From Styela clava (Eukaryota): DNA of 64,000 nucleotides. Both the position numbers and the translations under genes were made by a program. Where the stretch lies: positions 11,470,001 to 11,534,000 of the forward strand of contig NC_135263.1 of assembly GCF_964204865.1 (NCBI RefSeq), in the 5' to 3' direction. This document shows, in pieces, positions 2,943-11,562 of the stretch. The first letter of the stretch is position 1. Each line of letters starts with the position of its first letter. The notes beneath the pieces are model-generated. The model did no database searches and was not told the origin of the DNA. It saw only the letters and a program-made list of their open reading frames with translations.

Positions 2943-3554
2943 TCATGCCTGACCTTGCCCTTCGATATCCTGTTTTTCACATTGATCTGAATCACCGCCG
3001 AGACAGCAGTAAAATCCACCACGGCAACAGCATCCCACTGAAACACATGATTTGATATTCAGCATCGTAATATACCAGATAAGCTAACTATGCCAAATTT
3101 CATAGAGCATGGCAGCTAATATTGTGTCTCAAAATACTTAACTAGAACATTAAAAGATGTTCGTTTCGCTTTTCAGAAAATCAGAATTTCGCAACTCCAA
3201 AATATGGGACAATTTGAGCTGAAGAAGGAAAACTTGAATTTAATTAAAACTCTACTCACCTATACAGCGGTATCCATTCCCGCAGTGATCGTAGGCCTAT
3301 AAATAAAAACATTACTAAATTTTATAACTATATTCAATATAAACAGAGAAACGAATTTTCTAGATATTATTCTAACGGTTCATAGCAGATAACTTCAACA
3401 AAATAATTGGAGATCTGAACAAAGTAAAGTAAAGTATATCTTTGCATATTTTGCGATGAATCTACACTGATATACGCAACCCCCGGCACGCGTGATATTG
3501 ATACGTCAATATAATTTTTGTCAATATTTTCACGACATTATTGTCCGCTTTCAT
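2943..3554 (-). CDS. STMC6-like Cys-rich paralog A, with no TM exon found; secreted peptide or decaying gene
   Basis: Exon 3296-3260 (37 nt, ag/gtgagt) encodes AYDHCGNGYRCI. Exon 3037-2943 encodes (V)GCCCRGGFYCCLGGDSDQCEKQDIEGQGQA*. The 37-nt exon size and phase match paralogs B and C. A candidate first exon from ATG 3554 (MKADNNVVKILTKIILTYQYHACR) lacks the canonical phase-0 GT donor. Confidence 0.6.
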
Positions 3555-5973
3555 GATGGTATTTGCGTTTTATCACAAATTTCAGGGATTGCTGACAACA
3601 GACTTTGTGTTTGTTTGTCGTAATAACCATCTGCTGTGTCGTTGTTGGCAAATTAAAAGCCATTCTGGAACCAAACACAAAAAAATTATATAAAGGTGAA
3701 GAGAATGTAGCTATTAGAAAGGAACTTTCTCGTTTCGAAAAACAAAGTATTATTTTTCAAAAAATTCATTCGCAGTACAATTCAAAGTATGGAAAGTAGC
3801 TGTAAAATGCAGAATGTATCGCCAATCGTTGGAAGCATTTTACCGTTGGTAATTTCATTAAAGAAGTATTTATCGATTGTTCCCTTTGAGGATGTGCCAA
3901 ATAAAAATGTCATTCTCTGAGTGAGGAAAAGCGAGGGCAAGGATCCCACTGAAACATTGGGTTATTGTGAATATTTCTTTGTATATATAATAAAAATAAC
4001 TTCAATAATTTTTCGTGAAATATTACATTTAAGCATAACTTTAGGTAGTTAAACTATTGCCCCAGGTCTGATTATATAACGCAATTTTTCATCGGCCCGC
4101 AAACGTACATTTGGACATTAAATTTTAAAAATTGGCACACCGAAAAGAAAACGTAGCCGACCCCTGTCATAGAATATCTACATGACAATAAAATTTCTTC
4201 AAAAAAACTTTCACGTTTTATTAGGCCACCATAATATCTTAACGACATCTATACAGTGAAATTTTTAAAAATATGAAAAAAAATTCTAGATTTTTGTATT
4301 TTTCAATAAAAGTTCAACAACTACATTTATCATCATATGTAGTATAATCAAATATTTCAATCAATGGTATTCTTTCATGAAAGTTTTTCATTGCATTAAT
4401 ATCCAGTAATTAAAAATTGGGTTCTCCGAGTAAAATATTAAGCCATGAAAATATCAACAATGATTTTTGATACGTTTTCACGCCCTTTTTCACCACAAGG
4501 ATTTGTAGATGTAGCCAGCCGTAATAAGATGCTAATATTATAAAGAGCAGAATTTTTAATTCATGTTAGGTATTGCGTAGCTATTGTATCTCGTCTCGGG
4601 TCATGCGGGACTATACAGAGAAAAATACTGAAGTAATAAATAATTGTCTTGGCCTGAAATAAAAGTCATTCCTTTCTGACGAACGCGCACATAAAGATAT
4701 CTAATTAATTTTCGGTACAAATATTCTTTTTAATATTTGAGGAAAGGGGGAGGTTTGAGGCATGTTTAATAGGCTAGTGGCACCAAACTACGTTGTCATT
4801 GCAAGTTGGAAGTTCACGAAAACTGTGACAAATTAGGTAAGCTGTATTTCACTGGCTGCATTTGACAACAGCTATTTCTCATGGGTGTTCTTGTTCCAAC
4901 TTCCAGGTACCGTTATAGCACAAAGGACAAATTGCTGTCAAAATCAGATCCATAATGAGATACATAGCATATATATATTTATGTATTGTGAAGTTAAAAT
5001 TGTTCAAATATCTTGTTGGACAGGAATAATAATATACGTTAAAATTCCATAAACACAAAGCTCAATTATAATGTTTCAATTCAATATAGTATAGAGACTT
5101 AAAAAAAACTATATATAATAACATGAAATATGAGTTTAATATACATAACAGCGATGATCTTTGTTAGTCAATAGGGATATCAATAGTGGGTATATTTCTA
5201 CAGAGTTGTGAGCGGGCTCATCGTATAAGGACTGATCTAAGACTGAAACCATAAATACTAACCTGTACCAAATCATCATCATTGTGGGAGACCCACGCGA
5301 TGAAACAACTCAATCAATTTAACAGTTCATCATGTAAATTGTCAGTTATCAATTCTCGTGTTTGGATTACAACAAAATCGTATACTTAATCTGCGATAGC
5401 AACAATATCAGATAATCGTATCGTCAAATTTTCAAACCGATTAATTGATATCCATTCAACGTCCTTACCACACAAACACTAATTTACAGAAACATAAAAT
5501 AGTAAAATATTAAAATAGTATGTATTTTCATAGATGATCAATTTTTCTTGAAATCAAGTCTGACGAACTGGTACTGTTTGCTGCATGAAATGAAATAGTT
5601 TACGTTAGAGAGATTAAAAGAAGTTAGAAGACTCGAAGTATACGTAAGCCTAATTAACCAAATTTACTTTCTAACCCACTGTCAACATTGGCAAAAATAA
5701 TAGTATTTTGTTTTATATTAAAAGCTAACTTCGTAGTAAAAATGATGTCTAGAATTAACTTTGTGGTATCATTCAGCATAGCGTCTAGGTCGTGTTGCCA
5801 ATTTGGAATTGTAAATTGTTTATTTACAACCTTTTAAATTCGAAACTAGCATTTTAAAGTTAAGTTTGTTTCGCCTGAACTACTGCGAACATAATTTCTT
5901 TAGTATATTGTTAAACTTATATGACGTCATTCAATCATGTTTTGATGCATGGTTCGATGCACACAAATTGGTT

Positions 5974-10038: not shown

Positions 10039-11562
10039 ATGGATTTGAACATGATTTATCTTCGTTTCATTGTCTCGGTATCAACTTTGTTGAACTATTG
10101 CCAGGTACCTTGCTTTTGTACAATAATAAATAACGTTAAAAAAATACTAGATTTCAGTTCAATCACACATTGTTAATGACTTATTCTAAGAAAACAAAAA
10201 AATTTATTTTTTCACGAAACTCTTAGTGAAAGTTACCACACTATGATACAACACTATGTTGAAGCGAAAAAGAAACATTTTTATTGCCATACACCTGTCT
10301 TGTTCTGTTCCAACATGCTTGTATTCATGATCATATAGCGAGCGGTATCACAGGAGTAGCCAAATGCTCACACGACTGGATTGGTTATGGCTTAAAAAGA
10401 ACTAATTTTTTAATTTTCTCCATAGGCGTATGAAAGTTGTGGCGGAGGATATTACTGTAACAGTGAGTACGAAATTAAATGCCAGAAAATCCTGCATTTT
10501 TGCTAATTTCAAATCATACATTCAAATGCACTCAATTTTTAAATATATTAATGATTCGGATTTATAAAAAAAAATCGGATTTCAGAGAGCCAATTTGTGA
10601 TTTTTGTAGAATCTATCAATGAAGTGCTAGCTATGTGTACACTCTACACCCATAGTGCTAACCGCTTCCCCATACTCTTTCTGCTTCTTTTGAAGAACCT
10701 CCGCTTGGATGAATCTCTAATGTGTTCGTCGTACAAAGTATTAATAAAGTTCCACTTTACGATATTCTACGGCTACGCTTATGTAAAAAGTACTCTATTT
10801 TTAGCCGGATACTGCTGCAGGGGCGGAGTCTATTGCTGCACATACAACACTGGAACGTCTGGAGGATCTCTGTGGTGTAAGATGTTATATATTGGCCAAA
10901 CAGTGACTACGCTTTTAAACAATCCATATTTTGCAGCAACTCGTATATAAACATTAAATGTTATTAATTGATATAGTTGGTCGCTCAGTGATGGTTGATT
11001 TTGAATTTGAATAAGGCTTTCCAAGTGTTATTTGTGCATCGATAACAACAAACAAACGGAATTTCTAATGGGTAATATATAACCCTGTATCTGGAAGCAC
11101 CAACTTCGCATCAACCCAATACTTTTTTTTTTAATCTGTTGTCATAGTTATACGAATCATTTTTATTTAACAGGGGTTAGTCTTATCGTCTTTTTTCTGC
11201 TGGCAATATGTGCCGTAGTTGGATGGTGGTGCCGACGAAGAAGAAATGCGGTTCCCGTTCAGGTTCCAACTACCGCCGTCTTCACGACATCTCAACCTTA
11301 TAACCCTGCACCGCCGTATGTTGCAACGGTATGGGATATATTTTGACAAACATATTTTCTATTGAATAAGTAAAAAGTGGGAATGCAGCCTTGGGTTAAG
11401 TATCGTTTGATATAGATGCTGCAGTTCAGATAAATCTTCGTATAATTATTATAAAAGCGCAAGGGTATTGATCTATGGAATCGACAAACAAAAGTGCTAT
11501 TCGTGTCATAGAGATTATTCATGTCTTTTTTTCAGCAGACAACAACTACTGCTCAGACCTGA
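10039..11562 (+). CDS. STMC6-like (WBP1/VOPP1/TMEM92/CYYR1-like) single-pass protein, paralog C, ~118 aa
   Basis: Exons 10039-10104, 10426-10462, 10805-10876, 11174-11328 and 11536-11562 join in frame: MDLNMIYLRFIVSVSTLLNYCQ-AYESCGGGYYCNTGYCCRGGVYCCTYNTGTSGGSLWWVSLIVFFLLAICAVVGWWCRRRRNAVPVQVPTTAVFTTSQPYNPAPPYVATQTTTTAQT*. This gives a signal peptide, C-C-CC-CC ectodomain, TM helix, basic stop-transfer and Pro/Tyr tail. Confidence 0.9.

What the first reader, a model, noticed from the sequence alone, without database searches (positions are those of the whole stretch)
2943..11562. Hidden three-gene cluster of tiny C-C-CC-CC proteins with a signalling / tail-less / soluble architecture
Seen: three paralogs share a 37-nt AY-x-x-C-G-x-G-x-x-C exon and a phase-1 G-x-CC-x5-CC exon. 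B and C also share a 66-nt signal exon ending CQ. B and C are head-to-head, and A lies downstream of B. Their C-termini differ: C has a TM helix plus a Pro/Thr tail with PYNPAPPY, B has a TM helix plus a ~9-residue tail without PY, and A has no TM. Known: the C*C*CC*CC pattern with a TM helix and PY motifs defines the STMC6 superfamily (WBP1, VOPP1, TMEM92, CYYR1; related to Shisa), whose PY motifs recruit WW-domain/NEDD4-family ligases. Inference: this may be a lineage-specific system with one ubiquitin-ligase adaptor, one tail-less competitor and possibly one secreted form, all binding through a ~25-residue ectodomain. The exons are too short for the ORF track, so automated annotation could easily miss them.
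Basis: partly seen in the sequence, partly recalled or inferred. Interest (0 to 1): 0.8.

Follow-up and report, generated by a model that had tools for sequence, protein, structure and literature searches.

The report
Sea-squirt cluster of WBP1-like membrane genes
The window holds part of a four-gene cluster in the sea squirt Styela clava that encodes tiny single-pass membrane proteins with a six-cysteine outer knob, distant kin of the WBP1/VOPP1/CYYR1 adaptor proteins, but the proposed adaptor, competitor and secreted trio does not hold up.

Summary
The exons are real and at the stated places, and they are not chance. The 37-nt exon motif occurs 4 times in the 377-Mb genome, all in this cluster.

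- **Organism and gene C:** the organism is Styela clava. Gene C is already annotated (XP_039265364.1, LOC120341011, 118 aa). All four of its introns appear in spliced contigs of public runs.
- **Gene D:** a fourth paralog lies 5.3-5.8 kb before the window. It is also annotated (LOC120341009).
- **Gene B:** B is spliced and expressed. All contigs that cross place 6633 carry one more base than the assembly there. Contigs from two studies run from B's last exon into a C-like tail that is absent from the assembly.
- **Gene A:** A is not soluble by design. It is a partial tandem copy of D with no first exon. Its membrane exon lies outside the window, its tail is frame-shifted, and dN/dS is about 0.9.
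- **Family:** this is distant STMC6/WBP1-like. Pfam WBP-1 is the top match but stays under its cut-off. The intron before the membrane helix has the same place, phase and split Trp codon as in the bona fide WBP-1 gene of the same genome.
- **Tail motif:** C's tail has no canonical PPxY or LPxY.

The scan noted another S. clava cluster with PY-motif tails on other DNA (s1-814203).

The parts
10039..10104 (+). Gene C exon 1 (66 nt, signal peptide, ends CQ)
   Evidence: Translation. Joint 10104/10426 (GT..AG) in X2 and X5. Equals P0001 residues 1-22.
10426..10462 (+). Gene C exon 2 (37 nt, AYESCGGGYYCN plus 1 base)
   Evidence: Joint 10462/10805 in X1, X2 and X5.
10805..10876 (+). Gene C exon 3 (72 nt, phase 1 to phase 1, GYCCRGGVYCCTYNTGTSGGSLW)
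   Evidence: Joint 10876/11174 in X1, X2 and X5.
11174..11328 (+). Gene C exon 4 (membrane helix, RRRR, Pro/Thr tail with SQPY and APPY)
   Evidence: 100% match to P0001. Best 19-residue Kyte-Doolittle mean is 2.62.
11536..11562 (+). Gene C exon 5 with stop. It has two acceptors 3 nt apart: 11539 (major) and 11536 (minor).
   Evidence: Joint 11328/11539 in X1, X2 and X5. Joint 11328/11536 in X6. P0001, isoform X1, uses 11536.
7517..7582 (-). Gene B exon 1 (66 nt, signal peptide, ends CQ)
   Evidence: Joint 7517/7162 in X1, X2 and X5.
7126..7162 (-). Gene B exon 2 (37 nt, AYEYCGNGFYCY plus 1 base)
   Evidence: Joint 7126/6675 in X1, X2 and X5.
6623..6675 (-). Gene B exon 3 (GYCCTGRGYCCTG...). 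The assembly is one base short after 6633 compared with all contigs laid there.
   Evidence: tables 4, 5 and 5c. Joint 6623/6068 in X5 only.
5974..6068 (-). Gene B exon 4 (membrane helix, WKKRMAIIR, stop in the assembly). At 5987, contigs of X5 and X6 leave the assembly.
   Evidence: table 7. Single copy in the genome. No stored protein found.
3260..3296 (-). Gene A exon-2 homologue (37 nt, AYDHCGNGYRCI plus 1 base)
2943..3037 (-). Gene A exon-3 homologue. It has a phase-1 GT donor after 2954, as in D. If unspliced, it stops at 2943-2945.
   Evidence: 77% identity to D's protein.
2300..2768 (-). Degenerate 18S rRNA 5' fragment inside A's last intron
   Evidence: RF01960, 34.1 bits, E 1.7e-7, below the gathering score.
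274..1736 (.). 95-bp satellite (15.4 copies). It is part of the roughly 4.7-kb insert between A's exon 3 and its membrane exon, which lies before the window.

Best explanation
The region is the larger part of an 18-kb, four-gene cluster in Styela clava: D, A and B on the minus strand and C on the plus strand. The genes encode very small type-I membrane proteins and form a lineage-restricted, very divergent branch of the STMC6 (Shisa-like/WBP1/VOPP1/CYYR1) group.

Shown:
- C and D are annotated. C and B are spliced and present in RNA-like runs.
- All four genes share a signal-peptide junction and a six-cysteine C-x5-C-x4-CC-x5-CC knob of about 25-35 residues.
- In C, B and D this is followed by a membrane helix.
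- Only the two Cys exons are conserved between B and C. Their introns do not align.

Inferred mechanism:
- The signal peptide is probably cut after the invariant Ala, by the -3/-1 rule, leaving a mature end of Y-[ED]-x-C-G.
- The knob, probably held by three disulfides, sits outside the cell or in the lumen. It would contact a partner membrane protein, as the Shisa and WBP1L ectodomains do.
- The short, fast-changing cytosolic tail carries sorting or docking motifs. C is the constrained, best-expressed member.
- C's PAPPY may dock WW-domain proteins weakly, but it is not a canonical PY motif.
- A is most likely a decaying partial duplicate of D, not a secreted form.
- B's tail-less end is most likely a structural allele or an assembly state rather than a designed competitor.
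For: - **Identity and annotation:** (C; D).
- **Splicing:** one search shows 7 of 7 predicted introns of B and C as GT..AG or CT..AC joints. Depth is zero in all 4 runs across 7720-9719 between the genes.
- **Cluster specificity:**
- **Family:**
  - WBP-1 is the top Pfam match for P0001 (E 0.017), P0002 (3.5e-4) and P0005 (2.3e-4).
  - Atlas neighbours are all STMC6-type families.
  - BLASTP of C against the Cys exon of the genome's true WBP-1 gene gives 10 of 21 identical residues, in the same register as the Pfam match.
  - Both genes end that exon with TGG T|GTAAG and start the next with GG. This is the same phase-1 intron, splitting a Trp codon after 'LW'.
- **Selection:** B against C gives pN 0.18-0.22 and pS 0.68-0.78 in exons 2-3, with dN/dS 0.36 overall. 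A against D gives dN/dS 0.87, with dS 0.26, about the same as intron divergence.
- **A as a partial copy:** homology with D stops short of D's exon 1. The scan that recovers the first exons of B and C finds none for A. A's last exon has a 20-nt gap.
Against: - No Pfam match reaches its cut-off. D has no Pfam match at all, and the exon pieces alone match nothing.
- phmmer over 1.84 billion proteins found only 5 proteins at E<=1e-3 besides C itself. One is spurious, and none is a named WBP1, VOPP1 or CYYR1 protein or a tunicate protein.
- The Atlas scores (0.88-0.92) are leads only.
- The dN/dS figures rest on 68-76 codons.
- The runs are labelled RNA only as a guess. Contigs show neither expression level nor strand.
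- A's three exons and five splice sites are still intact, so A may yet be used, for example after an unseen first exon.
- No partner, location or WW binding has been tested.
Confidence: 0.7

Rival explanations
1. One reading: C is a NEDD4/WW-ligase adaptor, B is a designed tail-less competitor, and A is a secreted decoy. All three would act through the same ectodomain.
For: The shared ectodomain exons are confirmed. C has a Pro/Thr tail with two PY dipeptides. The assembly gives B a 9-residue tail. STMC6 proteins such as CYYR1 and WBP1L bind NEDD4-family ligases through PPxY (PMC11399591, passages read).
Against: C has no [LP]PxY, only SQPY and APPY. X5 and X6 contigs extend B's last exon into a C-like tail (table 7). 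A keeps D's donor and has a membrane exon. It has no signal exon, its tail is frame-shifted, and dN/dS is about 0.87.
Confidence: 0.1
2. The genes encode membrane-anchored precursors of small secreted Cys/Gly/Tyr-rich peptides, for example antimicrobial peptides of blood cells, released by cutting at the membrane.
For: The ectodomains are tiny, rich in Gly, Tyr and Cys, and variable between paralogs. The genes form a lineage-specific tandem cluster, as immune peptide genes often do. With the assembly's own letters and the donor actually used, B would be read out of frame after exon 3 and would end before the helix.
Against: No dibasic or other processing site lies between the knob and the helix. 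The helix and the intron before it are shared with WBP-1-family adaptors. The nearest families by every method are membrane adaptors.
Confidence: 0.07
3. The likeness to STMC6 is convergent. Small CC-rich knobs next to a helix would have arisen independently, and the cluster would be an unrelated, tunicate-only family.
For: All sequence matches are under their thresholds. Only 4 credible distant relatives were found, among them a ciliate protein. Cys-rich, low-complexity regions attract weak matches.
Against: The intron place, phase and split codon are the same as in the true WBP-1 gene of the same genome. The CCTY and LW-W landmarks lie in the same register. Three independent methods point to the same superfamily.
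Confidence: 0.13

Closest known systems
WBP1 / WBP1L / VOPP1 (Pfam WBP-1, PF11669)
   Same: Signal peptide, a Cys pattern ending CC-x(4-5)-CC-TY, and aromatic 'LW-W' at the membrane edge. Both have a single helix and a phase-1 intron splitting a Trp codon just before the helix. The tail starts basic and then turns Pro-rich. WBP-1 is the top Pfam match.
   Different: The score is below the family cut-off (16.2 against 28.1 bits). An extra phase-1 intron lies inside the Cys knob. The first two Cys sit in a distinctive AYxxCGxGxxC exon. There is no canonical PPxY. C lacks the CCC run at the inner end of the helix, which A and D have. The genome has its own true WBP-1 gene elsewhere, on contig C10.
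CYYR1 (PF10873)
   Same: A small type-I protein with a Cys- and Tyr-rich knob, a helix and a Pro-rich tail. Atlas clusters named CYYR1 rank second for both C and D. CYYR1 recruits WWP1 through PPxY (PMC11399591).
   Different: C has no Pfam CYYR1 match. The genome has no match over the cut-off (best is 16.6 bits, E 1.9). CYYR1 has three PPxY motifs, whereas C has none in strict form.
Shisa / Shisa-like (PF13908 Shisa_N)
   Same: The C*C*CC*CC pattern, a single helix and a Pro-rich tail. This is the superfamily definition, as quoted in PMC5578492 and PMC6125347.
   Different: Shisa ectodomains are longer and have a second Cys block. The only link here is Atlas scores of 0.79-0.89.

Membership tests
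STMC6 superfamily (Pei and Grishin 2012, as quoted in PMC6125347 and PMC5578492; the original paper is not held) | Six conserved cysteines in the pattern C*C*CC*CC after a signal peptide | tested here: met
   C, B, A and D all have C-x5-C-x4-CC-x5-CC. A and D carry two further Cys.
STMC6 superfamily | Single transmembrane helix after the Cys domain | tested here: met
   Best 19-residue Kyte-Doolittle mean is 2.62 for C and 2.12 for D. B's exon 4 is. A's helix exon lies outside the window.
STMC6 superfamily | Aromatic motif (WY/WF/IW type) at the outer edge of the helix | tested here: met
   C has LWW. The true WBP-1 gene has LWWFW. B has SW only with the extra base seen in the contigs. D has RYVK instead, so the feature is not met in A and D.
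STMC6 superfamily | Pro-rich cytosolic tail with PPxY or LPxY motifs | tested here: not met
   C has SQPY and APPY only. B in the assembly has none. D has IPLY only. C's tail is Pro/Thr-rich.
Pfam WBP-1 (PF11669) | Score at or above the gathering cut-off of 28.1 bits | tested here: not met
   P0001 scores 16.2 bits, E 0.017, as the top match. P0010 and P0012 have no match. The exon pieces have no match. The genome search with the family finds only the C10 genes.
Pfam WBP-1 (PF11669) | Gene structure shared with a bona fide member: an intron between the Cys domain and the helix | tested here: met
   The same phase-1 intron, T|GG Trp, occurs in C and in the C10 WBP-1 gene. It was compared with one bona fide gene only.
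Pfam CYYR1 (PF10873) | Score at or above the cut-off of 31 bits | tested here: not met
   It is not among P0001's matches at E<=10. The genome's best match is 16.6 bits, elsewhere in the genome.

The most novel reading that the evidence does not exclude
The cluster could be a fast-evolving, tunicate-only offshoot of the STMC6 adaptors in which one conserved mini-ectodomain is paired with interchangeable cytosolic ends: a Pro/Thr tail in C, and a Cys-cluster (palmitoylation-type) end in A and D. B would segregate in the population as tail-bearing and tail-less structural alleles. That would make it a natural dominant-negative polymorphism of a membrane adaptor.
Probability: 0.15. Interest if true: 0.55.

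Novelty: new member of a known kind. Interest (0 to 1): 0.3.

Why it matters
The result adds a divergent, lineage-restricted branch to a little-studied group of tiny membrane adaptors whose human members (WBP1L, VOPP1, CYYR1) steer NEDD4-type ligases. It also shows that a shared intron can tie such short proteins together where sequence scores fail.

In practice it corrects the picture of this locus. There are four genes rather than three. Two are already annotated as uncharacterised. One has a probable one-base assembly error and an alternative tail. One is a probable decaying partial copy.

No function is shown, and the appealing three-part regulatory scheme is not supported.

Tried and rejected
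- **Exon-by-exon Pfam scan**: nothing useful came out, because the pieces are too short.
- **Protein search of the genome with single exons**: this found only the query itself, so I switched to degenerate DNA patterns.
- **Other pattern matches:** the six exon-3 pattern matches outside the cluster have stops next to the motif or no matching context. I set them aside as probable chance and did not follow them.
- **Loose end at 5987:** the 30 letters have no match in the window or in the genome at up to 2 mismatches. They have no local match downstream of B. No C-like tail is encoded within 24 kb downstream of B. B's exon 4 and its 3' flank are single-copy. A second assembled paralog and a repeated-element insertion are therefore both rejected. 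An allele or an unassembled copy remains possible.
- **Word search for B**: no candidate of 39-124 aa, which says nothing of longer proteins.
- **Word search with D's exon-3 frame**: this saw only proteins of 86-273 aa, so a short annotated A would have been missed.
- **A signal exon for A:** the strict scan found none. The loose scan gave only poor candidates.
- **Structure prediction:** I ran none. The Atlas's own models are poor, with pTM 0.28 and 0.24.
- **Papers:**
  - PMC11399591, PMC6125347 and PMC5578492 were read as passages found by term.
  - Pei and Grishin 2012 is not held and is cited only through those three papers.
  - A search for 'Styela clava' with the locus name found 0 papers.
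  - A search for 'CYYR1' with 'tunicate' found 1 paper, which is unrelated to judge by its title and the start of its abstract in the search listing; I did not open it.
  - Supplements were not opened. S1 Fig of PMC5578492 may bear on the motif definition.
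Full report
**What is there**

Gene C lies on the plus strand and has five exons:
- 10039-10104, 66 nt, MDLN...NYCQ
- 10426-10462, 37 nt, AYESCGGGYYCN plus one base
- 10805-10876, phase 1 to phase 1, GYCCRGGVYCCTYNTGTSGGSLW
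- 11174-11328, the helix, RRRR, and a Pro/Thr tail with SQPY and APPY
- 11536/11539-11562, with the stop

Gene B lies on the minus strand with exons at 7582-7517, 7162-7126, 6675-6623 and 6068-5974. Gene A, also on the minus strand, has exon-2 and exon-3 homologues at 3296-3260 and 3037-2943.

The alignments show A-Y-x-x-C-G-x-G-x-x-C invariant in four copies and G-x-C-C...C-C invariant in five.

**More than chance**

A degenerate pattern for exon 2 matches 4 times in the 377-Mb genome. All four are within this cluster, and the reversed control gives 0. The exon-3 pattern matches 10 times, 4 of them in the cluster, with 0 for the control. The other six have stops next to the motif or no fitting context.

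Both searches reveal a fourth copy, D, 5.3-5.8 kb before the window start.

**Organism and annotation**

A word search used the open frame around C's exon 4, scoring only the exon part. It returned one protein at 100% identity: XP_039265364.1, 'uncharacterized protein LOC120341011 isoform X1 [Styela clava]', 118 aa.

The same kind of search with D's exon-3 frame returned LOC120341009 in four versions of 129-141 aa. P0010 equals the model I had drawn from the DNA.

C and D are therefore annotated, though unnamed. No stored protein was found for B among proteins of 39-124 aa. None was found for A among proteins of 86-273 aa.

**Transcripts**

Twelve runs of one organism hold parts of 5900-11700, all kept as contigs and labelled RNA only as a guess. 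I laid X1 and X2 (study P1), X5 (P2) and X6 (P3) on 5720-11700.

All four introns of C appear as GT..AG joints:
- 10104/10426 in X2 and X5
- 10462/10805 in X1, X2 and X5
- 10876/11174 in X1, X2 and X5
- 11328/11539 in X1, X2 and X5, and 11328/11536 in X6

The last acceptor is therefore a tandem pair 3 nt apart, and the proteins differ by one Gln.

All three introns of B appear as well:
- 7517/7162 in X1, X2 and X5
- 7126/6675 in X1, X2 and X5
- 6623/6068 in X5 only

Depth is zero in all four runs from 7720 to 9719, between the two genes. Introns have low or no depth. The genome has no intron-less copies. The joints therefore come from spliced RNA.

**Corrections to B**

First, every contig that crosses 6633 has one more C than the assembly. 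That is 2 of 2 contigs in X1, 2 of 2 in X2, and the X5 contig, where the aligner shows it as 12 letters between the sides of the joint.

With that base, exon 3 ends in phase 1 at the GTGAGT donor. It then reads ...CCTGGSLS plus a Trp codon split T|GG, just as in C. With the assembly's letters and that donor, the frame would break before the helix. A one-base assembly error in a C run is the simplest reading, and a rare allele is the alternative.

Second, one contig in X5 (255 loose letters) and one in X6 (213) leave the assembly at 5987, inside exon 4, six codons before the assembly's stop. In frame, the first 30 loose letters read like C's tail (...QVPATTV against C's VQVPTTAV).

Those letters are not in the window or in the genome at up to 2 mismatches. 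No C-like tail is encoded downstream of B. B's exon 4 and its 3' flank are single-copy. Contigs colinear with the assembly across 5987 also exist in X1, X2 and X5.

So a tail-bearing version of B exists in animals of two studies. It is either a structural allele or an unassembled copy. I saw only its first 10 residues and cannot say whether it carries a PY motif. B does run on in some animals, though not by splicing in the assembly.

B also carries amino-acid changes between runs, at 7576, 7572 and 6018 (two variants at 6018). C's coding exons show one change, which is synonymous (11253).

**Gene A**

D's annotated proteins show that its exon 3 splices, by either of two donors 6 nt apart, to an exon encoding RLSRYVK, a helix and a Cys cluster (CICCCNACKC).

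The D and A loci are a tandem duplication that aligns through the introns at 73-82% identity. A carries an extra insert of about 4.7 kb that includes a 95-bp satellite.

A keeps the first donor (G|GT). Its homologous helix exon, with an open frame and an AG acceptor in phase 1, lies about 2.6-2.7 kb before the window. The stop that made A look soluble lies just past that donor.

Several observations argue that A is not a working gene:
- The homology with D stops short of D's first exon.
- A scan that recovers the first exons of B and C finds none between A and B. A loose scan gives only poor candidates.
- A's last exon has a 20-nt gap relative to D, which shifts the tail's frame.
- A against D gives dN/dS 0.87, with dS 0.26, like the intron divergence.

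I therefore read A as a decaying partial copy of D. Its exons and splice sites are still intact, and I could not lay reads on it, so use after an unseen first exon is not excluded.

**Selection on B and C**

At DNA level, only exons 2 and 3 with their splice sites align between B and C, at 72-76% identity. The introns do not align. In exons 2-3, pN is 0.18-0.22 against pS 0.68-0.78, and overall dN/dS is 0.36 (68 codons, so rough). The Cys knob is the constrained part.

**Family**

- **Pfam:** nothing matches the exon pieces. For the whole stored protein C, WBP-1 (PF11669) is the top match, at E 0.017 and 16.2 bits against a cut-off of 28.1, residues 31-83 to profile positions 1-47. D has no match.
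- **phmmer:** a search with C over 1.84 billion representatives gave 6 proteins at E<=1e-3. These are C itself, two bivalve proteins (Mya arenaria, Mercenaria mercenaria), one from the ciliate Tetrahymena malaccensis, one from a metagenome, and one spurious repeat protein. No tunicate protein and no named WBP1, VOPP1 or CYYR1 protein was among them. Six proteins were put to Pfam: the four credible relatives and two further members of the metagenome protein's cluster. Two of the six (P0002 and P0005) again have WBP-1 as their top sub-threshold match.
- **ESM Atlas:** by features, the nearest clusters for C are WBP1-like (0.92), CYYR1, another WBP-1 cluster, shisa-4-like, shisa-5-like, VOPP1 and DUF2650. 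A similar list comes up for D's older version. These are leads only.
- **Gene structure:** the genome has a bona fide WBP-1 gene on contig C10, with two exons over the cut-off.
  - Its Cys exon ends ...CCTYYYELW with TGG T|GTAAGT.
  - Its next exon starts GG TTC TGG.
  - C ends exon 3 with ...SLW, TGG T|GTAAG, and starts exon 4 with GG GTT.
  - That is the same place, the same phase and the same split Trp codon.
  - BLASTP puts C's YYCNTGYCC...CCTY on that exon's YRCAVGHCC...CCTY, with 10 of 21 identical, in the register of the Pfam match.
- **CYYR1:** PF10873 has no match over its cut-off anywhere in the genome.

I conclude distant kinship with the WBP1 branch of STMC6. It is not membership of Pfam WBP-1 as currently defined.

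**PY motifs**

The papers read define the docking motif as PPxY or LPxY (PMC5578492, PMC11399591). C has SQPY and APPY, D has IPLY, and B in the assembly has none. Among the four distant relatives, I see one strict motif by eye: LPVY in the Mercenaria protein. The ligase-adaptor role of C is thus an analogy with one defining feature unmet.

**Mechanism, as inference**

The signal peptide is cut after the invariant Ala (C-Q-A|Y in B and C, S-K-A|Y in D, by the -3/-1 rule recalled from general knowledge). A mini-ectodomain, probably held by three disulfides, would engage a partner membrane protein. The tail would give sorting or docking. None of this is tested.

**Verdict**

This is a real gene family that is partly already annotated. 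It is a new, divergent member of a known kind, and the three-role scheme is not supported.

Noticed in passing
window 2300-2768 (-): A degenerate 5' fragment of 18S rRNA lies inside A's last intron (Rfam RF01960, model positions 1-305, 34.1 bits, below the gathering score of 50, E 1.7e-7). The homologous stretch lies in D's intron, so it predates the duplication.
   Followed up: partly
window 274-1736: A 95-bp satellite with 15.4 copies at 88% match.
   Followed up: partly
window 12337-12975 (-): A single-exon gene for an FKBP-type isomerase with EF-hands, ending in HDEF.
   Followed up: partly
window 57321-57653 (-); 60569-60913 (-); 62593-62958 (-); 27459-27782 (-): A histone H4-like frame, two THAP-domain frames and a mitochondrial-carrier exon.
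   Followed up: partly
L019 1150-1385 (-), D's last coding exon: D's C-terminus differs between older and current RefSeq proteins...HAAQPTYKSSYHRGQVVYSV against ...HASKNLYRKT. The older ending resembles the sequence now found at A's copy. This could be an allelic or an assembly difference.
   Followed up: no
window 9880: An X5 contig of gene C carries 30 loose letters upstream of 9880. They do not follow an AG in the window, and their origin is unknown (table 7).
   Followed up: no
G000 contig C10, loci L020-L022: The bona fide WBP-1-family gene of S. clava (two exons over the Pfam cut-off), and a second weak match with a CCC run at the helix end.
   Followed up: partly
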